Shown here piece after piece: positions 35,564 to 54,642 of a stretch of DNA of 64,000 nucleotides. A program made the position numbers and the translations under genes. The notes under the pieces were generated by a model. It saw only the letters and a program-made list of their open reading frames with translations. It made no database searches and was not told the origin of the DNA. Numbering within the stretch: position 1 is the first letter of the stretch; each line of letters opens with the position of its first letter. The stretch lies in IMG/VR virus record IMGVR_UViG_3300046660_000219, positions 1 through 64,000 of that record, one strand, 5' to 3'.

Positions 35564-38500
35564 ATGTACGTTGACAAGCTTGGCGGTGATGTTTCGCACA
35601 CCGCGCTTTCGCTGGCTATGCCTGAGCATGCTCCGCTTCCCACGCGCGATAGGGAAATCGCCCTTACAAAGGGTAAGAACAAAACTCCGCGTACGGCTAT
35701 TGGTAAGGACATCGCAGCGAAGAACGAAGAGACGGCGCGCGAAGTCCATAACTCCTTGCGTCAGATTGGTCTTACCGTCGCCTATGCTAGCTTAACCGTG
35801 GCTACGTTCCTGCGTGGTGCTGGTTTACGTAGTCTAGATGATCGTGGTCAAGAAGTCGGTACGCTGCGACGTGAAACGGATCACGATCCGCAAAAGGCTA
35901 ACTCCATCGCGGCTGGCGCACTGTCTGCGGAAAGCTTGTTCAAGCACGCGGCATATGATGACGATACTATTACGTTCACGATGGGCAAGTTGAACGGCGC
36001 GGCGTCGATCATTATCGATCCCTATTCGGATAACTTCGAAACGGTAATCAAGCGTGTCCTCCCGGCGTACAACAAGCCGGTTGGTTACGAGAAAGCTGGT
36101 TACAGCTCGGTCAACCTCGATTTCGGTGACAAGACTGACGAAGATTTCGATCTTACCATTGCGTATGACGATCTAGTCAAGGCTATTCAAGGTACTGGTA
36201 TCGAACTGGACACGCCGCTGTTCTGTGGCAAAGCCAAGCTACCGAAAGGTGTGCGAATCGATATCAACCTGCAAGGGTCTATGCGCGCTAGTGTACAAAC
36301 GGTAACGTCATTCCCGTCGCTAGCGTCCCTGACTAATGGTAAGGGTAGCATAACGTCGAATATGTACGCCATCATGCCTGTCGTGGCCACCGTGAAGGTG
36401 ACTGTGCCAAAGGCCTGGGCGATGTGGGCGACGTACGCGGATAATGATTCCGAATTCGTCCCTACTCTGGCTATGTCGCACTTCTCTACTCTTCTGGCAA
36501 CCGCTGTCGGTACCAAAGGTGGTCGTAGCAACGGCATTACGAAGCGTGATCCGTTCGACAAGGAGAACGAAGCGAAGTTTGCGAACAACTTTGCCAAGAT
36601 CAGTGCGCGTATTAGTAACGTCGCCACGGCTAAGCGCCTAAATCAATCCCGTGCGAAGGTGCTGGGTTTTGAGGCTAAAATCCGTACCAATAAAGATGGC
36701 TACGCCATTCTTCCTAACGGCGAGTTGTGGTTCATTCCGCCGACCGACAATGTCGCGGAATTCGTCAAGCTTTCCAAGGAAGCTTCGGACGGCACGATTG
36801 ATGGTTCGCGCTTCGACTACCCGTCGCGTATCCTTTACGTCGATGCGGTCAACGAAGTCCTCGTGCACACTACGGCGTCATCTACCATTCATACGGTGGA
36901 CTTGCGCGGTAGTCGGCCGCTCGATGACATCTCGCAAGCTAAGTACAGCGCGACCTGGGCGTTAAACCCTACGGCGCTCAAGCACCTGTCGCTGTTTAAC
37001 GGTGCGGATCTTCCGGTCCCGGCTGCATTTATAGCTAGCCTTATCCGCAACAACAACAAAAACAACGAAGTACTAGCCAACGTCCCGTATTTCGCTGATC
37101 TCTGGCGACCTATTCCGGAGAACGGTTCACATGCGGGCGCATCTGCCATGCAAGCCGGTGACTGGTCGCAGCTCATCCGTCTAACAGACGGCAAGAATAC
37201 CTATATGATCAGTGACCCGGCAGAGCGTGAGCGTCTGTTGGGTATCTTGGCGCTTAAGCGTAGCAACGCTGATGTTGATCAAGAAACTGTATGGGCTGCG
37301 GAAAATCGTGTCATCGGTGCGATCCACGAAGCCGCCTTGGCCTTCACCACGGAAGCTCAAAAGTTTGCCGCTAGCGGTGGCCTAGAGCTGAACATGCCGG
37401 AAGGCGCACACAGCGTTTCGACCACGAACCAAGTGCGAATTGCGCTGTATGCGTTTACCCATTTGCTGTCGCGTTGGCCGGAATGTGAATCTAAGCGTCA
37501 GCGCAAGTTCTACGCCAACACACCCAAACCTCTTGATCGCATGGCTTTGAAAGACAAGCCTATTGCGATCCCAAACGTCGATATCGATACCGGTCTGTCG
37601 TACCTTTTCCCACACCAAGCGGAAGTGGTCCAGAACATCGATATCGCTGATCCGCCGGAAGCTGCGGTAATTGGTGGTGCGCCTGGTTTTGGTAAGACCA
37701 ACGTCATCATGGCGGACGTGTTGCTCTTGCTACAAAAAGGTAAGATCAAGCGCCCGCTGGTCGTTGTTCCGAACAAGTTGGAAGGCCAATTTATTAGCGA
37801 GATCAACCGCTTCACTCGCGGTCGGGTCAACGCTTACTGCGCCACCTTCCAAAACCTCAAGGACATGCAGTCGCCAGACGGCCTAAACTTCTCCTATGAA
37901 GAGACCGTCAAGTTCCTGCGCGATCTACCGCCGAATACCATTTTGGTTACCAACTACAACACGCTGACCAACAGCTTCTCGCAGTTCCCGCAACTGTATG
38001 ACTCGATGGCGGCGTACGATACGGTAGGCACGACGCAACAGCTCATGTCGTTCCCGTTCGTGGACATGTTCTATGCGGCGGGTGTGGACTACGTGTGCGG
38101 CGACGAGAGCCACAAGGTCAAAAACCTTAAGGCTGGTCGTGGTCAAGCGTTCTTAGCGCTTTGCGCCAAGGTCGATTACATCCGTCTGTCTTCCGGTACT
38201 ACCGTTAACAACGTGGTTTCTGACCTCGTTGGCCAGATGCAGAAGATCAATCCGCTGGCGCTGGGTGCATCGGTTGAGGCTTTCCAGAAAAGGTTCTTGG
38301 GCGGTGACAAGCAAGTCACTCGTGCAAGCCAAGCGGAAGACATCACCGAAGCCATGCGTGAATACGCTATGGTTATCCAAAAGGATAGTCGTAGCTGGGC
38401 GTACATGTTGCCGCCGTTGACGGAAATCTATCACCGCGTCGAGTTGACGACGCTGCAAGCTCGTTACTACGCCATTCTATTTTACAAGATGGCCGCGCTG

Positions 38501-41467
38501 ATCGAACGAGACGCTGCAAAGCGTAAGATCGATCTGCGTGAAGAGGACGATCTTGACAGCGGCGGACGTGGTAGGCGTCGGCGTCGTCCTAGTGACGATG
38601 AAATGGATGATGCTTCGCCGGAACAGTCGAAGCGCGACTCTATCATCGAAGCCATTTCGGCACGCCATTTCGGCGTGATCGATCGCTTCGTCAATTCGCC
38701 TGATACCTTTGTTGACTTCGTTGATGGTTCGTGGACCGCCGATGAAGAAGACGTGCGTCGGGCAAAGTTGAAGATGGATCCGCTTAGCCCAACTGAGCGC
38801 GCTTCTTGGCCGGCTATTGTTCCAAGTGACAACGACCTTGTATCGGTGAAGGCCAAGTGGGCGTATACCCTTATGTACGCCCACTTCAACATGCACGGTG
38901 CTCTTGCCGAAGTGCAGGCTAACCCTGGCTCGGCCAAGTTCCGCGCCGACCCTGAAAACAAGGTCATTACCCTTTCGCCGTACAAGGTTACCGGCACGCA
39001 CCTTTACGACAAGATGCCTGCTGACCTGAAAGCGATGACTGTCCGCTACCAAGCTGGTAACTTCGTGGAGGTTGAGCGCTTCAAACGCGACGACAAGATT
39101 AAGATTGTCGTCGCTGATGAGATCTCGATCACCGAAGGCCATAATCTACAAATGGCCTCGCGTACTATTCGTATGCAGGGCGTCTGGACGCCGGGCTCTG
39201 AAACTCAGGCCCTTGCGCGTACCCGTCGCCCCGATCCGGGTGGTAAGCGTCAACGATTGGGCTACGATCACATCGTGGCTACTCTTCCTGGCGCTAACGC
39301 TGGCGAAACCAAGCCTACCATTGACGATCTGCGTACTGCCCGTTTGTTAGCTAAGAAACTGTCTAACTCGCGTGTCGAGTTCGGTTACGAGCTGTCTTAT
39401 CAACGTGCGGTCGGTCAGGTTGTGTCGGCACTGCCGCCGGTCAAGATGAGCATGAAGAACATCGAGGAGTTCAAGACCGAACAACTTGCTGCTTACTTCG
39501 ATGCACTTACTCGCCTGAACAACTGGATGTACGACAGTTCGAAGGCGATGACCAAGCAAATTGGTAAGGAAATCTTCGAGGCTACAGGCGAACAGGTTAT
39601 CGATGAAAACGGTAATCCTATCGACCTCGGAAAGTTCGTCGCTGCTGCTGTCGTCAAGACCGCTGCTGCGCCGGAACTGCCCGGTTCGCGTCGCTCCTAC
39701 GTTCCGTGGGTTGGTGGTTCTGAACCTATCAACCCACTCGGCTTTGAAATGATACCGGTACGATCGGCCACACCGATTTCGCTGGAGGATGACGAAGACG
39801 ACGGTGACGAAGGCGATGACGATGATCTAGCCTATGAGCGTATTTCCAACAACGTCGAGATTGATATCGGCACTTATGTGATGACCGAATACGGTCCCGG
39901 TATCGTTTCGCGCGTTGGTCGCCGTAAACGTGGTTCTTGGGCTGCTGCGGATGACATGTCGCCCGATGCTTTCCACGACGCGTCGTTTTACTATATCTCG
40001 ATCCCGTCTATTCGTAATGGTAAAGAAGCGCTGAACGTCCGTCTTGCTGCCAACCGCATCTTCGTCCCCGTTGATGATAATGGTAAGAAGATGTTGCGTG
40101 ACGCGATTAAGAACCGCACAAGCACGATGGCTCCTGTGCCTAATCCCATCACGGGTAAGCAGGTAGAGGATGCGCGCGACCGTAAGGCCGGTCGCAAAGC
40201 GGAAGAAGATCGTCGCTCGAAAAATCCGTCTGATGATGGATCGTTCGCCGACTATTCCGCGCCGACCGCTGATGACTTCGACTTCGACGACGAAGACTTT
40301 GATTTCATCGTTGATGACGAAGACGAGGCAGCCGATCCCGTCGATATCCTCGCGGATATGCTTGATGAAAACGGTAACATTGACTTCAGCGATGAGGTTG
40401 ATGACGACGAAGACGAGACAGACGACCAAGCCGACGATGAAGAAGAGTTCTACGGTTTCGCTCTAGCCATCAACGGCCAACTGGCCTTGTTGGTGGACAG
40501 TGAAAGTCAGGAAGACAACGCCCTGGACGGTATTATTTCCGACTATGGCTTCAAACGCTTCCCGAACTTCACCCGTCTGCACATCAAAACCAAAGCGGCT
40601 CTAGACGCTGTGCTTACACGTCTGGCTAAGAAACGCTATGTCATTCCGCCCCAAAACATGGCTGAAATTCAAAGCCTTGCTAAGGGTTTGACGCAGCGTG
40701 GTGCGCTGAAGCAAACGGAACCGTTCAACTTCCGCGAAGTCACGAACTTCATGATGACGGAGCAACGTCGCGTGCCGGCTGGTACTAATGGTACGAAGCC
40801 GTTCCGTGTCTACGCTCTTGTTCAGCACGGGCTGTTCTATCTTGTCGCCTCTACGGACAAACATCCGTTCCGCGTCAAGCAAGCCTTTACTGATGCTGCC
40901 GCTGGTGTTGCTGGTGTCGGCAAAATCAAGGATTTCTACAACCAAGCTGTTATGTTCGTGAAAAACAAACGGCAAGCGCAAACCGTCGCGAATAACCTCA
41001 TTTCTGCTGGCCTGATCAGCAACGAAGAGGAGTTCCTGTCGGATCTAGCGGAATTCCGTGTCGGCGGTCCTGCTGCCGGCCTACTGAGTCCGCCGGAACG
41101 TGAAGAGCCGGCGGTACCTAAAACGGTACCGACGCCAAAGGCTCCCGTGCCTGCGCAAGTGACTAGCGATTACAGAGAAGGGCCTAACAACCCTGACGTG
41201 GAAAATCTCGCTGAGTTCCGTAACTTCCTGCAAGCCAATAAACCGGTCATGGTGCTCGTTAAGGGTACAATGCTGCCTACGGGCGTGCCTTACATGGTCA
41301 AGGGCTACAGTAACGGAGAGTTCGCGCTCTCGAATCGCAAGAACCAAGCGCGCGACGACTACGAGATGTTCCATGTCCCGGGTAAGGCCGACGTCAGGTT
41401 CGACAACACCAAGGGCCTGATGTACGTCGGAAAAACTGTATGGCGTCTGTCCTATACGGCGTCTTAA
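35564..41467 (+). CDS. SNF2-like (SF2) ATPase/helicase, 1967 aa
   Basis: APGFGKT, DESH, SGT, EGHNLQ, QALARTRR. Confidence 0.9.
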   Translation: MYVDKLGGDVSHTALSLAMPEHAPLPTRDREIALTKGKNKTPRTAIGKDIAAKNEETAREVHNSLRQIGLTVAYASLTVATFLRGAGLRSLDDRGQEVGTLRRETDHDPQKANSIAAGALSAESLFKHAAYDDDTITFTMGKLNGAASIIIDPYSDNFETVIKRVLPAYNKPVGYEKAGYSSVNLDFGDKTDEDFDLTIAYDDLVKAIQGTGIELDTPLFCGKAKLPKGVRIDINLQGSMRASVQTVTSFPSLASLTNGKGSITSNMYAIMPVVATVKVTVPKAWAMWATYADNDSEFVPTLAMSHFSTLLATAVGTKGGRSNGITKRDPFDKENEAKFANNFAKISARISNVATAKRLNQSRAKVLGFEAKIRTNKDGYAILPNGELWFIPPTDNVAEFVKLSKEASDGTIDGSRFDYPSRILYVDAVNEVLVHTTASSTIHTVDLRGSRPLDDISQAKYSATWALNPTALKHLSLFNGADLPVPAAFIASLIRNNNKNNEVLANVPYFADLWRPIPENGSHAGASAMQAGDWSQLIRLTDGKNTYMISDPAERERLLGILALKRSNADVDQETVWAAENRVIGAIHEAALAFTTEAQKFAASGGLELNMPEGAHSVSTTNQVRIALYAFTHLLSRWPECESKRQRKFYANTPKPLDRMALKDKPIAIPNVDIDTGLSYLFPHQAEVVQNIDIADPPEAAVIGGAPGFGKTNVIMADVLLLLQKGKIKRPLVVVPNKLEGQFISEINRFTRGRVNAYCATFQNLKDMQSPDGLNFSYEETVKFLRDLPPNTILVTNYNTLTNSFSQFPQLYDSMAAYDTVGTTQQLMSFPFVDMFYAAGVDYVCGDESHKVKNLKAGRGQAFLALCAKVDYIRLSSGTTVNNVVSDLVGQMQKINPLALGASVEAFQKRFLGGDKQVTRASQAEDITEAMREYAMVIQKDSRSWAYMLPPLTEIYHRVELTTLQARYYAILFYKMAALIERDAAKRKIDLREEDDLDSGGRGRRRRRPSDDEMDDASPEQSKRDSIIEAISARHFGVIDRFVNSPDTFVDFVDGSWTADEEDVRRAKLKMDPLSPTERASWPAIVPSDNDLVSVKAKWAYTLMYAHFNMHGALAEVQANPGSAKFRADPENKVITLSPYKVTGTHLYDKMPADLKAMTVRYQAGNFVEVERFKRDDKIKIVVADEISITEGHNLQMASRTIRMQGVWTPGSETQALARTRRPDPGGKRQRLGYDHIVATLPGANAGETKPTIDDLRTARLLAKKLSNSRVEFGYELSYQRAVGQVVSALPPVKMSMKNIEEFKTEQLAAYFDALTRLNNWMYDSSKAMTKQIGKEIFEATGEQVIDENGNPIDLGKFVAAAVVKTAAAPELPGSRRSYVPWVGGSEPINPLGFEMIPVRSATPISLEDDEDDGDEGDDDDLAYERISNNVEIDIGTYVMTEYGPGIVSRVGRRKRGSWAAADDMSPDAFHDASFYYISIPSIRNGKEALNVRLAANRIFVPVDDNGKKMLRDAIKNRTSTMAPVPNPITGKQVEDARDRKAGRKAEEDRRSKNPSDDGSFADYSAPTADDFDFDDEDFDFIVDDEDEAADPVDILADMLDENGNIDFSDEVDDDEDETDDQADDEEEFYGFALAINGQLALLVDSESQEDNALDGIISDYGFKRFPNFTRLHIKTKAALDAVLTRLAKKRYVIPPQNMAEIQSLAKGLTQRGALKQTEPFNFREVTNFMMTEQRRVPAGTNGTKPFRVYALVQHGLFYLVASTDKHPFRVKQAFTDAAAGVAGVGKIKDFYNQAVMFVKNKRQAQTVANNLISAGLISNEEEFLSDLAEFRVGGPAAGLLSPPEREEPAVPKTVPTPKAPVPAQVTSDYREGPNNPDVENLAEFRNFLQANKPVMVLVKGTMLPTGVPYMVKGYSNGEFALSNRKNQARDDYEMFHVPGKADVRFDNTKGLMYVGKTVWRLSYTAS

Positions 41468-42587: not shown

Positions 42588-44417
42588 ATGATTCGAGGTT
42601 TTGGTAGCTACAGCGAGCGTGGCGGTGTTATTCAAGCTAGAGAAACCGCCTCTTCGCAACGGCGCGGCGCTGAGCTTGCCGTGCGTGGTCGCGCTGGTCG
42701 TAATGTTGAGACTGCTAGCGGTGGCGCTGCTGTTTCGTCCATGGGTTTTGGTGGTTTGACCGCCGACGATCTTAGCTTGAGCTACATCGGTGGTTCGGCT
42801 AGTCGTAACACCCAGAACACCTATAGCGCTCCGCCAGAAGTCTACAATTATTACGCTGCCATCTTCCGTGAAGATCATGTGTGTGGTGCGGCTGTGGAGC
42901 TGCGCTCTAACATTCCGTACGCGGCAGGCATGCGCCTGTCTGGTACCAAGGACGCTAGCCGTCTGAAGGTCTATCAAGATACCGTTTCCGCACTCCGCAT
43001 GGAGTCGATGATGGCGCGTATCTCGATCGAGCGTGACGCCATGGGTGCGTTCTTCGGCTCGTTGGATTTCAACGCAGAGAAGAAGACCTTCGACTCCATT
43101 CTACCCTTATCGCGTCTGGACATCACGAAGATCAAGTATCCGCCTGTACACGGTCTTGATCCTGTCGTGGACGTTAAGCCTAGCCAACTCATCATGGATT
43201 TGCTTGCGGATGCTAACGATCCGCGCGTCAAGCCGTTGCTAGACTGTGTTCCGGACTTCCTGAAGACCGCACAAGGCACAAACGGTGTAGCCGTCCCCTC
43301 TAAAAACCTCGTGTGGATCGCACGTCCGCACATCGATCCGCGCTACAATTCTATCTATCACCGCATCCTACCTATTTTCTTGATCGAACGTGCGTTGATG
43401 CGCGGTACCATTGAAGGCGCGCACCGCCGTCAAAAACCTATCCTACACCTAATGCTAGGACAGGGCGAAGAATGGGCTCCTACTCCGGAAGAATTTGACT
43501 TCGTCTCAGGCCTGTTCACTGATGCTGACGCCGACCCGCTTGGCGCTATCGTCGCGACGCGTGACAACATTAGCGTCAACGAAGTGCGCAGCCCACAAGA
43601 CTTCTGGAAAATCACGGACATCTCCGATCAGACGCTTACCTTTAAGCTACGTGCTCTAGGGATTAGCGAAGCCTTCCTGTCGGCCGACGCTTCATTCGCT
43701 AACGCGGACTCTGCCGTTACCGTTTTCATCGAAGGTCTGCGAGCTGAACGTAACCAAGTGGAAAAGCAAGTCTTCTATGACAAGTTGTTTCCGCAAATCG
43801 CCATGGCTAACTCGTTCTTCAAAGGTAAGAAGGGCGCTGCTGGCTCTAACATGTCGCTCAATTCGATTGATGACATCAGCAACCTCGACGTTCCTACCGT
43901 TGAATGGCGGCGTTCGCTCCAACCAGAAGGCGACGGCGCGTACATGGATCTGTTGGCCGCGCTAGAGGCTCACAATGTACCTATTCCGGTGCGTATGTTT
44001 GCTGCTGCGTCCGGCATCGATTTGAATACTCTTTTGGAAGCTTCCGAACAAGACGTCAAGGACCGTAAGGCCATTGCTGATTGGCGGGAGAAAATCAAGG
44101 AATTCCAGCCTGAAGATCCTGCGATGATGGGTGCTGAAGGTGGTGGAGAGTTTGCTAGAGCCTCGCTCTTCGATGCACTGGCGTCGCCTAACTCTCTGCG
44201 TCCGATTGGTGTTCTCAATCGTGATTACGGTGACGTAGAACGGTACGATCATGCACCGCTAGACGGTCGTGGTCATCGCCAACCGGCTTCGAAGAAATGG
44301 AAGCTTGAGAAGCGTGACGAAATACATCGTCTTCTGGCGCGCGTAACCGCGCAAGTGGCGCAAAAAGAGAACTACCACGCCCGCCAACGCGGGCTGTTGG
44401 TCGACGGTCAAGTGTAG
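42588..44417 (+). CDS. Probable portal protein
   Basis: 609 aa; IFREDHVCGAAVEL, KLRALGISEAFLSADASFANA, PTVEW patterns typical of portals; head-gene context. Confidence 0.65.
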   Translation: MIRGFGSYSERGGVIQARETASSQRRGAELAVRGRAGRNVETASGGAAVSSMGFGGLTADDLSLSYIGGSASRNTQNTYSAPPEVYNYYAAIFREDHVCGAAVELRSNIPYAAGMRLSGTKDASRLKVYQDTVSALRMESMMARISIERDAMGAFFGSLDFNAEKKTFDSILPLSRLDITKIKYPPVHGLDPVVDVKPSQLIMDLLADANDPRVKPLLDCVPDFLKTAQGTNGVAVPSKNLVWIARPHIDPRYNSIYHRILPIFLIERALMRGTIEGAHRRQKPILHLMLGQGEEWAPTPEEFDFVSGLFTDADADPLGAIVATRDNISVNEVRSPQDFWKITDISDQTLTFKLRALGISEAFLSADASFANADSAVTVFIEGLRAERNQVEKQVFYDKLFPQIAMANSFFKGKKGAAGSNMSLNSIDDISNLDVPTVEWRRSLQPEGDGAYMDLLAALEAHNVPIPVRMFAAASGIDLNTLLEASEQDVKDRKAIADWREKIKEFQPEDPAMMGAEGGGEFARASLFDALASPNSLRPIGVLNRDYGDVERYDHAPLDGRGHRQPASKKWKLEKRDEIHRLLARVTAQVAQKENYHARQRGLLVDGQV

Positions 44418-47016: not shown

Positions 47017-47790
47017 ATGGGGCGTAGGTCCAACTTCAAGCGCCATCCGCGCGACCTGTATAAGACGTGCGACATACGCGCCATCATACCTTTGTTGCCA
47101 CATATCAAACACGTTTCTGTTTACGCGGAAACGTGCGCAGGCGACTCCGATCTGGTGCGCCTGTTGCTACCACATGGCAAGCGACCAATTGCGCAGTACG
47201 ACATCGTTCCACTAAATAGAAGTGTAGAGCGACGGGACGCGTTCTCGCTTACTCGTGCTGATATGCGTGGCTGTGGTACTATTATCACCAATCCGCCGTG
47301 GGATAGGAAGCTGTTACATCCGCTGATAATGCACTTCCTGTCGCTGGGCGTGGACGTGTGGTTGCTGTTTGACGCGGCATGGTGTCAGACTTTGCAATCC
47401 GTGCCGTTTATGCCATACTGTCGCAAGGTGGTAGCAGTCGGTCGGGTCTGTTGGTTTCCCAAGACCAAACAGACCGGCAAAGAAGATGCTAGCTGGTACC
47501 ATTTCTCACCGTACAATGTCGGCGAAGACACCCTGTTCTTTGGCCGTATACCTTCCGACGCCATAAAGGGACAACATGGCTCGCACCTACAGTTTCAAGA
47601 CGAAAGCCGAGGCCGCAAGGTTCAAGCCCACGTACGAGGCGGCCAACAACGCCTTCCACAACGGCGACAGCATAATGCTGGACTCGGACTTCGAAGCCCT
47701 CAAAGAAGCGCTGCTGCCGTGGTATCCGGAAATAGAAAGCCACATCGGCGCAACGCAAAACGCTTCAGCACGCATGGTGCCTCTGCCTAA
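47017..47790 (+). CDS. DNA amino-methyltransferase (NPPW motif)
   Basis: MGRRSNF..RDLYKT, ETCAGDSDL, IITNPPW. Confidence 0.8.
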   Translation: MGRRSNFKRHPRDLYKTCDIRAIIPLLPHIKHVSVYAETCAGDSDLVRLLLPHGKRPIAQYDIVPLNRSVERRDAFSLTRADMRGCGTIITNPPWDRKLLHPLIMHFLSLGVDVWLLFDAAWCQTLQSVPFMPYCRKVVAVGRVCWFPKTKQTGKEDASWYHFSPYNVGEDTLFFGRIPSDAIKGQHGSHLQFQDESRGRKVQAHVRGGQQRLPQRRQHNAGLGLRSPQRSAAAVVSGNRKPHRRNAKRFSTHGASA

Positions 47791-49429
47791 TGCGATGACC
47801 AGTCAGGTTAAGGCGCGCAAAGATACGATTCACAAGTACGTGGATCGCATCGGACCTGACACCCACGGTTCAGCCAAAGCCGATGGCTCATCGTTGCAGA
47901 TCGTCAACGTCAAAGGCGTCAAGAAATTGTACTCTAGAGGTGACGCCAAGACCAATACCGGTCAAGACGTTAGCCATCTAATACCATTGTTGAAGATTGG
48001 TGAATGTCCGCCCGGTTACGCGATCCGCTTTGAGTGCGTGCTGACACGCGCGGCCTTTGAGCAAGTAAAAGTCATCACCAAGGGTAAGCGCATCAAGGAT
48101 TACACAGCGGCGCGTAACGTGGCGTCCAGTGGGATCGTCAACAACTCCCGCCCAGACCCTGCGATAGTTGCTCTCGCGTCTTGCCCGGCTTTTACTATTT
48201 ACAAGCCGAAGATGACGCCGCGCCAAGCCTTCGCCAGACTAGTTGAGCTGGGTTGGGAAGTGCCGCTCAATCAACCAATCACCGATCTGTCCCCTAGAGC
48301 ACTAACCCTATTGCTGAAGACGTGGGAGCGTACCGTTCCGTACGACATCGACGGTATCGTGCTGTCAAAGAACGTGCACGAAGCGCCAGTAGCCGGTAGC
48401 AATCCGCACCACAGCGTTGCGTTCAAGGTAGATAAGCCGCCACAAAAGGTAGTTGTCAGCAAGGTTGTTTGGGAGGCTTCACAATATGGTAGACTCAAAC
48501 CAGTCGCCCATTTCGTTACACCCGTCAACCTCAACGGAGCCGAGGTCAGTAAAGCCACCGCTCACGACGCAAGAATGGTTCGCACTAAACGTATTGGGCC
48601 AGGAGCAGAAATCTTCATTATTCGGTCCGGGGAAGTTATTCCGAAGATCGTCGGTGTAGCCAAGCCTGCACTTAAAGCGTCGTTCCCTAAAAAGGGTACG
48701 TACACGTGGAACGGTGCGAACATCGAGGCAGTGGGTGACAACTACCGGGCCGAGATCCTGACCCGTCAGCGTGTAGCGTTCTTCGCCGACATCGGCGTGC
48801 TTGGCCTAGGCGAGTCCGTGGCGTCCAAGCTGACGGCCCTGTCGATCCCAGAAATCGCCCGCAAGAGCCCGATTGAGCTACGGGCGCTGGGTGTGGGCCA
48901 AGCGGACTCAGTAAAGCTCCCAGCGGCCATTAAAAAGGCCCTGGAGACGACCTCCATGCCACGGCTCATGGCCGCGTCGTCGGTGTTTGGTTCTGGGTTC
49001 GGTCTGACCAAGGCCAATGCTGTGTGGGCTGTGCTAAAAGGTAACCCACCTAAAACCCGCGCGGAGCTTGTCGAACGCGTGGTCGCGCTGCATGGCTTCT
49101 CCAAGGTATCCGCTGAGTCGTTCGCCGCACGTTATGCGCAGTGGCTAAAGTTCCTCAAGGACTTACCCTTTAAACCGATCGTATCTGGCGGCTCTGGTAA
49201 ATTGGTCGGTAAGCTGTATGCGTTTTCCGAGTTCCGCGACAAGGAGCTGGAGAACTTCATCATAGACCAGGGTGGTCAAGTTAAAGGTAGCGTATCGAAA
49301 GCAACAACTGCTGTGTTCGCCCCTCCCGGTGCTAACAGCACTAAAGCGCAAAAGGCTAGATTGCTACAGGTGCCAATCGTACCGCCTAGCCAAGCGCGCG
49401 ACTTTATCGGGTATGAGCCTAAACCATAG
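47576..49429 (+). CDS. NAD+-dependent DNA ligase
   Basis: DSDFE, KADG, YDIDGIV, AFK, IRSGEVIPKI, HhH and BRCT-like tail. Confidence 0.9.
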   Translation: MARTYSFKTKAEAARFKPTYEAANNAFHNGDSIMLDSDFEALKEALLPWYPEIESHIGATQNASARMVPLPNAMTSQVKARKDTIHKYVDRIGPDTHGSAKADGSSLQIVNVKGVKKLYSRGDAKTNTGQDVSHLIPLLKIGECPPGYAIRFECVLTRAAFEQVKVITKGKRIKDYTAARNVASSGIVNNSRPDPAIVALASCPAFTIYKPKMTPRQAFARLVELGWEVPLNQPITDLSPRALTLLLKTWERTVPYDIDGIVLSKNVHEAPVAGSNPHHSVAFKVDKPPQKVVVSKVVWEASQYGRLKPVAHFVTPVNLNGAEVSKATAHDARMVRTKRIGPGAEIFIIRSGEVIPKIVGVAKPALKASFPKKGTYTWNGANIEAVGDNYRAEILTRQRVAFFADIGVLGLGESVASKLTALSIPEIARKSPIELRALGVGQADSVKLPAAIKKALETTSMPRLMAASSVFGSGFGLTKANAVWAVLKGNPPKTRAELVERVVALHGFSKVSAESFAARYAQWLKFLKDLPFKPIVSGGSGKLVGKLYAFSEFRDKELENFIIDQGGQVKGSVSKATTAVFAPPGANSTKAQKARLLQVPIVPPSQARDFIGYEPKP

Positions 49430-49458: not shown

Positions 49459-49493
49459 AAGCGCGCTGGGTTCACCGCTCAGCGCGCTTTTTT
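49459..49493 (+). terminator. Intrinsic terminator
   Basis: AAGCGCGCTGGG..CTCAGCGCGCTTTTTT. Confidence 0.8.
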
Positions 49494-49581
49494 GTTGTCT
49501 AAATCACAGGCAAAATAGTATAGTGCTTGCTAGTCACGGCCAGACTGAGCCTATACTTAAGCCATCACTATGGGACGAATA

Positions 49582-50136
49582 ATGAGCTACGTAAGAGACA
49601 TAACAGAACGCACCATGCACGAGATAGCTGACCATTTTGGGCCTAAGCCCTTGACGCAAACTGATCTGGCTAACTATTGGAACGCCAGTGCTGTTGCGCC
49701 GCGAAAGGCTATGAAGCTGGACGTTACCGCGCGCCTAGCGCAAACAGGTGAGAAGGTCGTTACTACTATTAACGGTAAGGTGGAGACGGTAAATATCGCC
49801 AAGACTGAAAGCGTCGTAGTACGCAATCAAACAGGCGAAGAGTATATTCTGCCGTACTCTACCTTTAAAGATCAATACAGCGGACCACCAGTTAATGGAA
49901 CCTATCAGGAATACGAAAGCATCGGCTTCCGCTATGTCATGCCGTACGATGGCAACGCTACGCAGCTAGAGGCGTCGTGGGGTGAATTGCAGACGTTAGA
50001 GCCCGGCGACATGCTAGGTTGCCTGACTTCTGGTCCTAACGGTGACATCTACCGTATCGCCTACGACGCCTGGAAAGACGGTTACAGTTTCATCGATGAC
50101 GGAACTACCGACCCGCGCCTTAAGCTTACGGTCTAG
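49582..50136 (+). CDS. PGDYG-like domain protein with E14-x-A16 leader
   Basis: GEEYIL..F...Y, ASWGE, EPGDML, DIYRI. Confidence 0.6.
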   Translation: MSYVRDITERTMHEIADHFGPKPLTQTDLANYWNASAVAPRKAMKLDVTARLAQTGEKVVTTINGKVETVNIAKTESVVVRNQTGEEYILPYSTFKDQYSGPPVNGTYQEYESIGFRYVMPYDGNATQLEASWGELQTLEPGDMLGCLTSGPNGDIYRIAYDAWKDGYSFIDDGTTDPRLKLTV

Positions 50137-50147
50137 GAGCTTTATAG

Positions 50148-50663
50148 ATGAGCCACGTAGCTGCCAGACTCTCGCGCCTGTTTGCAGAATTCGCTCAACA
50201 AACCAGAGTTCAGCATGTGGTTATTGACGCCAAAAATGGTATGGGTGCGACGCCTAACGGCGCTGACATCGATTACTTTGGCGTCCAAGTTCGTATGAAG
50301 CCTCTTGTGTTTTTGGATCTAGCAGACAAGCTACGAGGCGGTGCACAACGCATTGCAGCTATAGCTAATAAAATCGAAGAAGGTGCTCCCATAGCACCAC
50401 CATTTCTTACTATTATGGTGCCGAGTAATTGGCGGGACGCTGATTTTTCCGGTGTGCTACCAAAGATCGTTGGACATGACGGTCGCCATAGAATGCGTGC
50501 TGTCGCGCAAGTATTTGGCCCAGAGCCTATACCAGTCAATCTTTTTCTAAAGTCGCCCGATCGTCAATGGCGGGGGTCTAACATTACGCCAGATGTTCTT
50601 GATCACCTTAGAAAGGGTATGATCGAGCAAGATGGTTCCCGTGTTGTACAAGATGCGTTCTAA
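50148..50663 (+). CDS. ParB/Srx-like domain protein with E14-x-A16 leader
   Basis: APPFL...IVGHDGRHRMRA. Confidence 0.65.
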   Translation: MSHVAARLSRLFAEFAQQTRVQHVVIDAKNGMGATPNGADIDYFGVQVRMKPLVFLDLADKLRGGAQRIAAIANKIEEGAPIAPPFLTIMVPSNWRDADFSGVLPKIVGHDGRHRMRAVAQVFGPEPIPVNLFLKSPDRQWRGSNITPDVLDHLRKGMIEQDGSRVVQDAF

Positions 50664-50674
50664 GGAAACAAGCC

Positions 50675-51202
50675 ATGAGCTTCGTCAAAGATATAGCAGA
50701 TAAAACCTTACGGGAAGTGGCTAATGCTTTTCCACTCGCGCACAGCCCGCACTACATCTATGACCCTGTAAATAGTTATCAGAGTGGCGCGGCTGCTGGT
50801 GCTTTTCTGTACTCGCAGGATCGCGGTAACTTCTGCCTTCTTCAACGTGGGCACGCCGGTGATCAATCCGGTACATGGGGCACGGCTGGCGGTTTATTAA
50901 ATCCAGGTGAATCAGAGGCCGATGCAATACCGCGTCTCCTGAAAAGCACTATTGGCTATATCGGTGAAATTGTAGCCCTGGTTCCCATCTACATTTACCA
51001 GCGTGCTGCTTTTACATACGAAACTTTCGCGGCTGTCGTGCGTGAAGAATTCGTACCAGATTTAACACCCGATATTACAGGTTTCCGGTGGGATAAATTC
51101 GGCCGCTGGCCTGATCCGTTGCACTACGGTTGGCAGGCGGTAATGGATGACAAAACTGCCTATGAGCGTGTGATGCAAGTAGACATCACTTACGGCCTGT
51201 AA
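50675..51202 (+). CDS. Nudix-fold protein, degenerate box, with E14-x-A16 leader
   Basis: LLQR...GTWGTAGGLLNPGES...RLLKSTIGY. Confidence 0.7.
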   Translation: MSFVKDIADKTLREVANAFPLAHSPHYIYDPVNSYQSGAAAGAFLYSQDRGNFCLLQRGHAGDQSGTWGTAGGLLNPGESEADAIPRLLKSTIGYIGEIVALVPIYIYQRAAFTYETFAAVVREEFVPDLTPDITGFRWDKFGRWPDPLHYGWQAVMDDKTAYERVMQVDITYGL

Positions 51203-51264: not shown

Positions 51265-52113
51265 ATGGAACTCTGCCTTGCTATCATGCTGGCGGCTAAG
51301 AAGGCCGGTATCCTCGCTGGCGGTGACGGCAAGGACGGCACGCACGTCTATACCGTTGTTGACGCCCGTGATCCGGTTACCGTGGTCATTCGGCCGACTG
51401 GTCGTGCTACCCTTTCTACCGTTGAGAGTGACAAGGAACACCACTTCACGCTGAATGACGAGGATGACGTCGCTTCGCTGTTCGAGACCCTGGCCAAGAT
51501 GTTGATTGAGGAAAATCTCGACACCAAGGCTAACCGCTTGCTCAAGATTATCGAGTCAATGGGCGCTCAAGCCGACTCGGAGATTGAAGCGGACGGTGAC
51601 AATGCTACAGTTTCCGCCGATGACTCGGAAGAGGACGATACCAGTGAAGACGATGAAGAAGAGTACGAAGAGGAAGCTCGCGTGACCCAACCTTCTTTGC
51701 TGTCTAACAAGAGCGCCGCCTTAGACCTTTTTGAGCAAGAGTTAGCCACGGCGGCACAGCTTCCTATGCATATGCCTGCTGTGGATTTGGTTGTCGCTCC
51801 CGTTGAAACGGCGGCTAGCGCGTTAATGTCGTCGTGCGTTGATATGGTAGTGCTGACCAACATGACGAAGGGTGATTTCACGGTCTTTCAGATCATGGCA
51901 GCCTTAGCCGAAATGGTTGGTCATACCGACGCCGCGCGTATCTTCAACGCTGTGCAAACCTTCCACGAAGTAAATGGTATTCTGCCAGGCGGAGTAGGCG
52001 AACTGGCAGACCAGTGGATCTACAAGCTCATGGGCTATGTGGTTGACACGGCGGGTCCGATTACTGGTGCCGAGGTGCGCGGTACGCTCATCTCGTACAT
52101 GCCTATGATTTAG
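51265..52113 (+). CDS. Acidic hypothetical protein, putative head protein
   Basis: GAGGA RBS; acidic linker, EEA/ELA/ETA motifs. Confidence 0.7.
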   Translation: MELCLAIMLAAKKAGILAGGDGKDGTHVYTVVDARDPVTVVIRPTGRATLSTVESDKEHHFTLNDEDDVASLFETLAKMLIEENLDTKANRLLKIIESMGAQADSEIEADGDNATVSADDSEEDDTSEDDEEEYEEEARVTQPSLLSNKSAALDLFEQELATAAQLPMHMPAVDLVVAPVETAASALMSSCVDMVVLTNMTKGDFTVFQIMAALAEMVGHTDAARIFNAVQTFHEVNGILPGGVGELADQWIYKLMGYVVDTAGPITGAEVRGTLISYMPMI

Positions 52114-53844: not shown

Positions 53845-54642
53845 ATGAGTGCGGAGCGTTTCATTGAGACCGCCGATTGTCATGGTTTCCAAGCCTATTC
53901 GCTGCATGATGTGCTAAACGGTAGAGAAGACGATGCCAAGCGCGCGTTAATCACTGCCGGTATGGAAGTCAGTGACGGTGCTAGCGGTGCAGCTCTGGGT
54001 ATGGGGTGGCTTGAAGCCGCCGCTAGTCACTACAATGTCTCGCGCGATCCGAAAGACTACGTCATTGCACCGGTTAGCATCCTCGTTTCGGGCATGCCTA
54101 ACCGCAATGGTGTAGCATTTCCTTTGCGCGAGCTTGCTGCGTTCGACGTCGAATACAAGCAAATGGCTTACGAGACGTGGACCCGCTCGCCGGTGTTCTA
54201 CGAACACGCCAACGAAGATCACACCAAAGCACTCGGCGTGATCTTCGACACGACGATGCGTCATGCGCCAGAATTCGCTGGAGACGTACTATTTCGTGTC
54301 AATGCGTTGTGTGGTGTTGACCGTACGCGTGCACCAATGCTGGCTAATCGTGTTTTGACAGGTAACCTTAAGACGTGGAGCATGGGTGCTAGCGTTGCGC
54401 AGTATCAGTGCTCGATCTGCGGTCACAAGCCGACCAAGACCAGCCGTCGCTGTGAGCATATGAGCCTGGACAACAGGCAAATGCGTACCTTTGTTGGTGC
54501 ATCCGGTCGCCCCCCTAAGCTCGCTCACTACACGTGCGCGGGCATTCGTGGTTTCGAGACTTCGATGGTTGAGATTCCCGCTTGGGCTTCAGCGCAAAAT
54601 GAGCCTAATCAGCTCATGTCGCTGTACTCCCCCGCCGACTAA
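53845..54642 (+). CDS. Prohead (capsid maturation) protease
   Basis: NRNGVAFP..EL, PVFYEH, GVIFD, WSMG..CSICG, SMVEIPA. Confidence 0.7.
   Translation: MSAERFIETADCHGFQAYSLHDVLNGREDDAKRALITAGMEVSDGASGAALGMGWLEAAASHYNVSRDPKDYVIAPVSILVSGMPNRNGVAFPLRELAAFDVEYKQMAYETWTRSPVFYEHANEDHTKALGVIFDTTMRHAPEFAGDVLFRVNALCGVDRTRAPMLANRVLTGNLKTWSMGASVAQYQCSICGHKPTKTSRRCEHMSLDNRQMRTFVGASGRPPKLAHYTCAGIRGFETSMVEIPAWASAQNEPNQLMSLYSPAD

What the first reader, a model, noticed from the sequence alone, without database searches (positions are those of the whole stretch)
49582..51202. Second address label: three unrelated proteins with a 16-aa leader ending E14-x-A16
Seen: consecutive genes begin MSYVRDITERTMHEIA, MSHVAARLSRLFAEFA and MSFVKDIADKTLREVA (MS-aromatic-V, Glu at 14, Ala at 16), followed by unrelated PGDYG-like, ParB-like and Nudix-like domains. 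Known: T4 internal proteins share a short capsid-targeting sequence removed by the prohead protease. Inference: a capsid-targeting propeptide for cargo packaged in the head and injected with the DNA, possibly nucleotide-binding anti-defence factors.
Basis: partly seen in the sequence, partly recalled or inferred. Interest (0 to 1): 0.75.

Follow-up and report, generated by a model that had tools for sequence, protein, structure and literature searches.

The report
Head-cargo address tag in jumbo phage
Adjacent genes of an uncultured 206-kb phage put the same ~19-residue helical tag on unrelated proteins, most likely a tag that loads them into the phage head for injection, like the one known from phage T4 but with a different sequence.

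Summary
The three genes are real, tightly spaced, and follow a strong terminator and a promoter-like site. They lie in the head module between portal and prohead protease.

Leader similarity is very strong for g1 and g3: top non-paralogous pair among 44,551 N-terminus pairs, kept at protein rather than DNA level. For g2 it is no better than chance (local-alignment p 0.2-0.7; rank 8 of 297).

Two related metagenomic contigs support g2's place in the set. In L026 the g2 orthologue and the Nudix orthologue share a clear leader with each other. In L019 the Nudix orthologue keeps the leader.

All three proteins carry a 20-35 residue N-terminal extension that their families lack.

The g2 family elsewhere mostly starts with a T4-type capsid targeting sequence. 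RsoM2USA has three such genes, a Pfam S77 protease, and one tagged protein abundant in virions. The XacN1 homologue of g1 is tagged the same way.

The window's protease models as a T4 gp21 fold with invariant His/Ser.

Best reading: a capsid-targeting leader of a new sequence type. Packaging, cleavage and injection are untested, and E14-x-A16 is not conserved across the clade.

The parts
49459..49489 (+). Strong intrinsic terminator after the NAD-dependent DNA ligase gene. It separates the ligase from the cargo operon.
   Evidence: 13-bp stem with 8 G-C pairs, followed by a T-run. The sequence was read. A similar hairpin precedes the g2 orthologue in L026.
49495..49524 (+). Sigma-70-like promoter candidate (TTGTCT-18-TATAGT) in front of g1.
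   Evidence: Consensus scan, 9 of 12 matches. This is weak evidence on its own. No shared phage promoter motif was found.
49582..49638 (+). g1 leader, residues 1-19: MSYVRDITERTMHEIADHF.
   Evidence: Score 45-51 against the g3 leader. In the AF2 model residues 1-10 have pLDDT below 50 and residues 12-19 form a helix. Absent from family members.
49582..50136 (+). g1, 184 aa: leader, short linker, then a PGDYG-like beta-rich domain from about residue 24.
   Evidence: No Pfam or PHROG hit. Atlas neighbours include PF14083 PGDYG clusters and modules fused to DHH/DHHA1 proteins. Homologues in phages fHe-Yen9-02, GR11A and XacN1 match from residue 22-25 onward. No solved structural relative.
50148..50204 (+). 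g2 N-terminal extension, residues 1-19: MSHVAARLSRLFAEFAQQT. Amphipathic, and a diverged or doubtful member of the leader set.
   Evidence: Not significantly similar to the other leaders. Hydrophobic moment 0.54. The family core starts at about residue 20-25. The orthologue P0045 in L026 carries a clear clade-type leader.
50148..50663 (+). g2, 171 aa: a ParB/Srx-like small protein with a GHDGRHR motif.
   Evidence: 761 homologues at E<=1e-3. H110, G112, R113 and R115 are invariant. Atlas neighbours include ParB_N clusters. No Pfam hit for the family.
50675..50731 (+). g3 leader, residues 1-19: MSFVKDIADKTLREVANAF.
   Evidence: M1, V4, K5, I7, A8 and F19 are invariant in orthologues from L019 and L026.
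50675..51202 (+). g3, 175 aa: leader, about 16-residue linker, then a Nudix-fold domain with a degenerate Nudix box (RLLKSTIGY).
   Evidence: Pfam PF00293, E 5e-8, residues 39-141. Phage Nudix homologues align from residue 34-40. Orthologues keep REI[KR]EEIGY.
51265..52113 (+). Conserved acidic 'core protein X', a candidate scaffold or core component and a possible receptor for the leader.
   Evidence: An orthologue lies immediately upstream of the protease in L019, L023, L024 and L026. It has an acidic tract. No Pfam or PHROG hit.
53845..54642 (+). Prohead (head maturation) protease with a gp21/assemblin fold.
   Evidence: phrog_18299, E 9e-65. H121 and S179 are invariant in 33 homologues. 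The AF2 model has pLDDT 84. Its best PDB match is T4 gp21, 5JBL, E 6e-4, probability 1.0.
42588..44417 (+). Portal protein. It marks the start of the head module that contains the cargo genes.
   Evidence: phrog_16240, E 1e-112. The order portal - ligase - variable genes - protease is syntenic in RHph_I42 and in the contigs L019, L023 and L024; Yoloswag keeps ligase - variable genes - protease.

Best explanation
The first ~19 residues of g1 and g3, and the equivalent but diverged extension of g2, are an amphipathic-helix address label.

Proposed mechanism:
- During procapsid assembly the label docks these otherwise unrelated small proteins onto the internal core or scaffold. Candidate receptors are the conserved acidic protein X at 51265-52113 or the large acidic scaffold just beyond the window.
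- The proteins are thereby enclosed in the head.
- The gp21-fold prohead protease (53845-54642) probably then clips the label after the Glu at position 13-16.
- The cargo stays in the head and enters the host with the DNA, where it most likely acts early on nucleotide- or DNA-based host defences.

Shown:
- A shared leader on unrelated domains in two phages of the clade.
- Protein-level conservation of the leader.
- Its add-on nature relative to the families.
- Its position in the head module.
- The gp21-like fold of the protease.
- The same cargo families carrying T4-type capsid targeting sequences in other phages.

Inferred: packaging, the receptor, cleavage, injection, and what the cargo does.
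For: 1. Leader shared by unrelated proteins within a genome.
- g1-g3 score 51 and L026 ParB-Nudix score 42, both p<=0.001. Unrelated N-termini have mean 12.9, sd 3.7.
- Within-phage cross-protein pairs (51, 42) exceed between-phage cross-protein pairs (21-28).

2. Protein-level selection.
- Nucleotide identity is only 62-63%.
- Only 5 of 8 and 4 of 11 identical residues share a codon.
- Upstream DNA is unrelated.

3. The leader is an add-on.
- Family cores begin at about residue 24 (g1), 20-25 (g2) and 36 (g3).
- In the g1 model the leader is low-confidence and detached.
- All leaders are amphipathic helices.

4. Genomic position.
- The genes form their own transcription unit inside portal...protease...MCP.
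- The slot between ligase and protease is variable in relatives.

5. The protease has the T4 gp21 fold with an invariant His/Ser pair. The diverged gp21 relatives studied, T4, phiKZ and SPN3US, cut after Glu (PMC9026906). Every clade leader has a Glu at position 13-16.

6. The same cargo families are CTS-tagged elsewhere.
- 47 of 149 g2-family representatives match a strict T4-CTS regex, against 0 of 299 own genes.
- They sit in arrays of consecutive CTS-tagged genes.
- RsoM2USA ORF385 (MQTFKQFLSE) lies 4 kb from an S77 protease. ORF89, with the same tag, is among the ten most abundant virion proteins (PMC8504454).
- The T4 CTS is MKTYQEFIAE (PMC8442874).
- The XacN1 homologue of g1 starts MKLHDIITE, 13.4 bits on the CTS profile, and XacN1 has an S77 protease.

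7. T4 Ips share nothing but an N-terminal packaging leader, and they are injected anti-restriction factors (PMC12373910).
Against: - There is no direct evidence that any of these proteins is in virions or is cleaved.
- The phage is known only from metagenomes, and only two related contigs carry the leader.
- g2's own extension is not significantly similar to the others.
- The putative cleavage motif is not positionally conserved. The L026 Nudix has G14/E16, and the residue three positions before the cut (P3) varies between M, L, V, F and A, G.
- The protease matches neither Pfam S77 nor S78, and its specificity is unknown.
- No other gene in the 206-kb genome carries the label. The 'system' would therefore serve only two or three proteins.
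- Nudix and ParB-like genes are also neighbours in a phage where only one of them is tagged (L030). A shared non-capsid function could therefore explain the linkage.
Confidence: 0.6

Rival explanations
1. The shared helix is a docking element for a non-capsid partner. It might assemble the Nudix-like, ParB-like and PGDYG-like proteins into one cytoplasmic complex, or bind a common host or phage target. It would have nothing to do with packaging.
For: Nudix and ParB-like genes are neighbours in three different phages: G000, L026 and L030. That suggests functional coupling. The conserved positions are on the hydrophobic face of a helix, as expected for any protein-protein interface. The Glu motif is not strictly conserved.
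Against: The genes sit in the head-morphogenesis module next to the core protein and protease in all three clade phages. In other phages the same families carry bona fide T4-type capsid targeting sequences, which points to a packaged lifestyle. In L030 the untagged Nudix shows that the pairing does not need a shared helix.
Confidence: 0.17
2. The leader is a historical by-product with no function of its own. The 5' end of one gene was copied onto its neighbour by recombination, giving a shared translation start region, and has simply not yet decayed.
For: The genes are adjacent and only two or three carry it. Phage hyperplastic regions often recombine at gene boundaries.
Against: DNA identity is only 62-63%, with many synonymous differences, and the upstream regions are unrelated. 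The copy is therefore old and maintained at protein level. The Nudix orthologues, only 38-42% identical overall, keep six invariant leader positions. An independent pair in L026 shares its own version of the leader.
Confidence: 0.08
3. The leader is a regulatory tag, such as a degron or an auto-inhibitory propeptide. The phage protease or a host protease would remove it to time the activity of potentially toxic enzymes, without capsid targeting.
For: There is a Glu-containing motif near the end of the leader, and the genes lie close to a protease gene. ParB-like and Nudix enzymes could be harmful if active early.
Against: Prohead proteases of the gp21 type act inside the procapsid (PMC9026906). 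g3 lacks the catalytic Nudix glutamates, so it hardly needs inhibition. The tag is detached from the domain in the g1 model.
Confidence: 0.07
4. Chance resemblance.
For: For g2 alone the resemblance is at chance level.
Against: g1-g3 and the L026 pair lie far outside the null, and the leader is conserved in orthologues.
Confidence: 0.03

Closest known systems
T4 capsid targeting sequence (CTS) of internal proteins IPI/IPII/IPIII and Alt, removed by prohead protease gp21
   Same: - A short N-terminal peptide is shared by otherwise unrelated, non-essential small proteins encoded in adjacent genes.
- The phage has a gp21-fold protease.
- A Glu lies near the end of the leader, preceded by a hydrophobic residue two positions earlier.
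- The cargo families overlap with those tagged by T4-type CTS in RsoM2USA, XacN1 and metagenomic phages.
   Different: - The leader is about 19-20 residues rather than 10.
- It has no sequence similarity to MKTYQEFIAE. A strict CTS regex matches 0 of 299 genes in this genome.
- The protease does not match Pfam S77.
- The phage belongs to a different lineage, the Yoloswag / RHph_I42 / GR11A-type head module.
- Nothing has been shown experimentally.
Arrays of T4-CTS-tagged genes in RsoM2USA/XacN1-like and metagenomic large phages (L029, L030)
   Same: Consecutive genes have unrelated bodies and a common N-terminus. The arrays include the ParB-like family of g2 and, in XacN1, the PGDYG-like family of g1.
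   Different: Those arrays use the T4-type decapeptide M[KR]xx[DE]-hydrophobic-hydrophobic-x-E and, where checked, an S77 protease. Here the label is a different, longer helix.
P1 DarB N-terminal packaging signal (Dar anti-restriction system)
   Same: An N-terminal signal longer than 9 and at most 30 residues directs a protein into the head. The genes lie next to portal and protease. A giant helicase-containing protein sits just upstream of the portal in both phages (PMC9024508).
   Different: No common N-terminal consensus was found among the P1 Dar proteins. In P1 no cleavage of the signal is reported.
phiKZ / SPN3US ejection-protein propeptides
   Same: Head-internal proteins have N-terminal propeptides that a diverged gp21 homologue cuts after Glu. 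The paralogues gp53 and gp54 share an identical 15-residue N-terminus (PMC5694885).
   Different: Those propeptides are mostly longer than 100 residues and sit on paralogous families. Here the tag is short and sits on unrelated families.

Membership tests
T4-type capsid targeting sequence system | A short N-terminal peptide shared by otherwise unrelated proteins of one phage | tested here: met
   Met for g1/g3 (score 45-51) and for L026 ParB/Nudix (score 42), p<=0.001. Not met for g2 itself.
T4-type capsid targeting sequence system | Leader sequence matches the T4 consensus (MKTYQEFIAE; aromatic at positions 4 and 7, I/L at 8, E at 10) | tested here: not met
   The strict CTS regex matches 0 of 299 genes of this genome. 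Scores on the family-derived CTS profile are -10.2 (g1), -2.6 (g2) and -7.4 (g3), against a null mean of -8.2.
T4-type capsid targeting sequence system | Phage encodes a gp21-type prohead serine protease | tested here: inconclusive
   At fold level, yes: the best PDB match is 5JBL, E 6e-4, probability 1.0, with invariant H121 and S179. At sequence level, no: there are no Pfam S77 or S78 hits.
T4-type capsid targeting sequence system | Leader removed by cleavage after Glu in a short motif | not testable with these tools
   A Glu is present at position 13-16 in all six clade leaders, but its position and the P3 residue vary. No proteomic data exist.
T4-type capsid targeting sequence system | Leader necessary and sufficient for packaging, and the proteins are present in virions and ejected | not testable with these tools
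   The phage is uncultured. The only indirect support is RsoM2USA ORF89, a CTS-tagged protein that is abundant in virions (PMC8504454).
Nudix hydrolase (g3) | Nudix fold / Pfam PF00293 match | tested here: met
   E 4.8e-8, 33.5 bits against a cut-off of 21.1.
Nudix hydrolase (g3) | Nudix box GX5EX7REUXEEXGU with the catalytic glutamates | tested here: not met
   g3 reads G-x5-E-x7-R-L-L-K-S-T-I-G-Y. Orthologues in L019 and L026 read REIKEEIGY and REIREEIGY.
ParB N-terminal / Srx-like domain (g2) | Sequence match to PF02195 or a solved ParB | tested here: not met
   No Pfam hit for g2 or for 27 relatives. The family profile has no PDB hit.
ParB N-terminal / Srx-like domain (g2) | ParB-like fold with an arginine-rich motif | tested here: inconclusive
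   Atlas feature neighbours include ParB_N clusters (score 0.93), and the structure TM-score is about 0.5. The motif GH[DE]GRHR is invariant. No own model was compared with the PDB.
PGDYG domain (g1) | Match to Pfam PF14083 | tested here: inconclusive
   No Pfam hit. Atlas neighbours carry PGDYG in 13-39% of members, with TM-scores 0.51-0.59. The motif PGDM/PGDY is conserved.

The most novel reading that the evidence does not exclude
A second, independently evolved capsid 'address code'. In a clade of jumbo phages with a divergent gp21-fold protease, a ~19-residue amphipathic helix has taken the role of the 10-residue T4 CTS. The same cargo families (ParB-like, PGDYG-like) move between phage lineages by exchanging address labels. 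The label drifts in concert among the cargo genes of each phage because it co-evolves with that phage's head core. The cargo, including a Nudix that has lost its catalytic glutamates, would be injected nucleotide- or DNA-binding counter-defence factors.
Probability: 0.45. Interest if true: 0.72.

Novelty: new variant of a known kind. Interest (0 to 1): 0.6.

Why it matters
- If confirmed, this extends sequence-defined capsid targeting beyond T4-like phages. It would give a recognisable rule for spotting injected proteins in uncultured jumbo phages: the same N-terminal helix on unrelated neighbours near the protease gene.
- It nominates three protein families as packaged early effectors. One of them, the ParB-like family, is shown here to be very widely CTS-tagged in metagenomic phages.
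- It offers a new tag for loading foreign proteins into large capsids.
- The within-phage concerted change of the label is a testable case of co-evolution between a signal and its receptor.

Tried and rejected
- Close relatives of g1, g3 and the protease in IMG/VR: none.
- Degenerate DNA patterns for the leader in IMG/VR and JGI metagenomes: no match.
- Profile-guided locus search: only leaderless Nudix genes from unrelated phages.
- Word-based homologue search with g3: found only itself.
- DNA or RNA-level explanation of the similarity: rejected because of synonymous differences and unrelated upstream DNA.
- MAFFT alignment A5, which placed the family N-termini under g1 residues 11-21: judged an artefact. 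The register TQxD...W / TQxE...F needs no 10-residue gap and agrees with the BLAST ranges.
- The idea that g2 keeps a relic of a T4-type CTS (LFAEFAQQ against TFKQFLSE): not supported, p 0.10.
- Shared late-promoter motif (CCTATA) upstream of g1 and the L026 operon: not enriched.
- Pfam S77 and S78 for the protease: no hits.
- Sequence search of the PDB with the protease: no hits.
- Fold search for g1 in the PDB: nothing significant.
g2 alone was used instead.
- Checking the L029 and L030 records for an S77 protease was not possible.
- Literature searches found no proteomics for the Yoloswag-type clade.
Full report
**Setting**

The window is the first 64 kb of a 205,908-bp IMG/VR virus record with direct terminal repeats. 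No cultured phage matches it at DNA level.

Gene order around the finding:
- portal, 42588-44417 (phrog_16240, E 1e-112)
- a small protein and a fibre-like GDSL protein
- NAD-dependent DNA ligase, 47576-49429
- g1, g2, g3
- a conserved acidic protein 'X', 51265-52113
- a GDSL esterase
- head maturation protease, 53845-54642 (phrog_18299, E 9e-65)
- several GDSL esterases
- beyond the window: a large acidic scaffold-like protein, a virion protein, the major capsid protein (65652-66731), tail sheath and tail tube

The order ligase - variable genes - protease recurs in Erwinia phage Yoloswag. Rhizobium phage RHph_I42 and the metagenomic relatives also show the portal upstream of the ligase. A 13-bp-stem terminator (49459-49489) and a promoter-like site (49495-49524) precede g1. 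The three genes are separated by 11 nt.

**The observation**

The quoted N-termini are correct. Start 49582 is preferred over 49570 because of the leader homology and a weak GGGA upstream.

g1 and g3:
- They share M-S-[YF]-V-[RK]-D-I-[TA]-[ED]-[RK]-T-[ML]-x-E-[IV]-A-x-x-F.
- Among 44,551 pairs of predicted N-termini in this genome, only the paralogous 'MTTAVL' esterase family scores higher.
- Among 5,842 start candidates, each is the other's top hit by a wide margin.
- The similarity is maintained in the protein, not the DNA. Nucleotide identity is 37/60, three of eight identical residues use other codons, and upstream DNA is unrelated.

g2:
- Local-alignment scores to every other leader are 11-16 (p 0.19-0.74).
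- It ranks 8th of 297 genes against a profile built from g1, g3 and an orthologue.
- The 'three-of-5,842' regex result is real but was fitted to g2.
- What g2 does share is an extension of the right length and a strongly amphipathic helix pattern.

**The leader is an add-on**

- g1: phage homologues (fHe-Yen9-02, GR11A, XacN1, Vibrio phages) and seven metagenomic relatives match only from about residue 22-25. Most are 145-156 aa.
- g1 model: residues 1-10 have pLDDT below 50, residues 12-19 form a low-confidence helix, and the beta-rich core follows.
- g2: an exhaustive search gives 761 relatives whose match begins at g2 residue 20-30.
- g3: about 100 phage Nudix genes align from residue 34-40. 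An IMG/VR relative has no extension.

**Relatives of the phage**

Protease homologues led to two informative contigs.

L019 (protease 75% identical):
- Order: ligase - two unrelated small genes - Nudix - X - protease.
- Its Nudix is 41% identical to g3 and starts MTFVKKIADTIVKEIAATFP.

L026, found through the best g2 homologue P0045:
- Order: hairpin - ParB-like P0045 - a 232-aa gene - Nudix - fibre-like genes - X - protease with an intein.
- Its Nudix starts MQRVKEIANRALIGIEHAF. Its ParB-like protein starts MSVRVLAIASRALEGITAAF.
- With one gap, 11 of 19 positions are identical (score 42, p 0.0008), again with many synonymous differences.

So in a second phage, two unrelated proteins share a leader. 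That leader resembles, but differs from, the one in the window.

Score comparison:
- Within-phage cross-protein pairs: 51 and 42.
- Between-phage cross-protein pairs: 21-28.
- Between-phage orthologous pairs: 53, 34 and 22.

This is the pattern expected if the label co-evolves with something else in each phage. In the three Nudix orthologues M1, V4, K5, I7, A8 and F19 are invariant. More distant relatives (L023, L024) keep X and the protease but fill the slot with other genes and have no leader.

**The same cargo families carry T4-type labels elsewhere**

The T4 CTS is MKTYQEFIAE (PMC8442874). Residues 4 and 7 matter for targeting, and residues 8 and 10 for processing (PMC9026906).

Ralstonia phage RsoM2USA:
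- ORF385 is the only homologue of g2 in a cultured phage (33% identity). It starts MQTFKQFLSE.
- Exactly three genes in the genome have this N-terminus, and the control pattern gives 0. A fourth is close.
- It has a Pfam S77 gp21-type protease (E 2.5e-30) 4 kb from ORF385.
- ORF89, with the same tag, is one of the ten most abundant virion proteins by mass spectrometry (PMC8504454).

The g2 family at large:
- Among the 149 best representatives, 47 match a strict regex, ^M[KR]xx[DEQK] then two hydrophobic residues, x{1,2}, E. The figures are 0 of 299 for genes of this genome and 0 of 39 for control proteins.
- Many more are near-misses.
- In two contigs the family member sits inside runs of four to seven consecutive genes with unrelated bodies, all starting MRAxxF[IL]xE or MK[VL]x[ED][LI]xxE.

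The g1 family:
- Xanthomonas phage XacN1 ORF211 starts MKLHDIITE. This scores 13.4 bits on that profile, against a null of -8.2 +/- 4.2.
- XacN1 also has an S77 protease.

Both uncharacterised cargo families therefore behave elsewhere as T4-style internal-protein cargo. T4 Ip1-3 share nothing but the N-terminal packaging leader, and they are injected inhibitors of GmrSD enzymes (PMC12373910).

**The protease**

- It matches no Pfam family, and sequence search of the PDB finds nothing.
- 33 homologues share invariant H121 and S179, plus a Cys3-His insertion.
- The AF2 model (pLDDT 84, pTM 0.81) has T4 gp21 (5JBL) as its only significant PDB match (E 6e-4, probability 1.0). Herpesvirus proteases follow.
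- T4 gp21 and its diverged phiKZ and SPN3US relatives all cut after Glu in short motifs (PMC9026906, PMC5694885).

The leaders have these Glu motifs:
- g1: M-H-E14
- g3: L-R-E14
- g2: F-A-E14
- L019: V-K-E14
- L026 ParB-like: A-L-E14
- L026 Nudix: G-I-E16

A Glu is therefore always present at position 13-16, but 'E14-x-A16' is not conserved. If cleavage follows the family rule, the new N-terminus is residue 15 (or 17 in the L026 Nudix). This step is inference.

**The cargo**

- g3 has the Nudix fold, but its box reads RLLKSTIGY. Both orthologues have REI[KR]EEIGY. It has probably lost hydrolysis and may only bind ligand.
- g2 has an invariant GH[DE]GRHR motif and ParB_N-like neighbours in the ESM Atlas, but no Pfam or PDB sequence match.
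- g1 is PGDYG-like by Atlas neighbours. It resembles modules fused to DHH/DHHA1 phosphoesterases. Its fHe-Yen9-02 homologue is next to a DHH gene, and its XacN1 homologue lies among NAD-salvage and NADAR genes. It has no solved relative.
- Nudix and ParB-like genes are also neighbours in L026 and L030.

A role against nucleotide- or DNA-based defences is a reasonable guess and no more than that.

**Verdict**

It rests on convergent comparative evidence rather than any direct test.
- It works like the T4 CTS. It is not a member of that sequence family, and the protease is related only at fold level.
- I found no report of this label in the literature searched.
- I rate it a new variant of a known kind, with interest 0.6.

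Noticed in passing
window 44719, 52254, 54658, 56061, 57411, 59636, 61508 (+ strand starts); genome 83281: Eight proteins, mostly GDSL/SGNH esterase-like, start with a near-identical MTTAVLAASDLATAGG-type peptide. They are interleaved with head genes. In more distant relatives (L021, L023, L024), small proteins in or next to the ligase-protease slot start with a vaguely similar ITNVSA...SLTLAAG peptide.
   Followed up: partly
window 3091 (- strand), 33789; genome 128890, 137036, 198883, 204389: Several unrelated proteins begin with Pro/Lys-rich N-termini of the type KKP[IV][KR]P. This is a possible third shared N-terminal element.
   Followed up: no
window 35564-41467: A 1,967-aa protein with SNF2/ResIII helicase domains lies just upstream of the portal. 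This is the position darB occupies in phage P1 (darB-prt-pro), so it may be another packaged protein (PMC9024508).
   Followed up: partly
window 50675-51202 (residues 72-95): The g3 Nudix box has lost the RE..EE glutamates (RLLKSTIGY). The orthologues in L019 (3766-4350) and L026 (1375-1896) keep them.
   Followed up: yes
window 53845-54642; L026 6232-8178: The protease family carries an invariant Cys189/Cys192/Cys203/His205 insertion, zinc-ribbon-like, in a gp21 fold. The L026 orthologue is interrupted by a LAGLIDADG intein right after the conserved FYEH motif.
   Followed up: partly
L029 8423-13527; L030 10001-13095; RsoM2USA ORF81, ORF89, ORF90, ORF385: These are runs of consecutive genes with unrelated bodies and T4-CTS-like N-termini in large phages outside the Tequatrovirus group. 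The ParB-like family of g2 is a very frequent member: 47 of 149 representatives match a strict CTS pattern.
   Followed up: yes
L030 9513-9941 and 10001-10483; L026 105-653 and 1375-1896: Nudix and ParB-like genes are neighbours in three different phages, which hints at a functional pair. L030 also has NAMPT nearby.
   Followed up: partly
window 51265-52113: Acidic protein X has a highly conserved about 70-residue N-terminal domain. It lies directly upstream of the protease in every relative examined except this phage, where a GDSL esterase gene is inserted between them.
   Followed up: partly
genome 65652-66731 (outside window): The major capsid protein orthologues share a conserved [QT]-G-E-[LI]-N-A motif at about residue 29-40. 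This is a possible maturation cleavage site after Glu, and is speculative.
   Followed up: no
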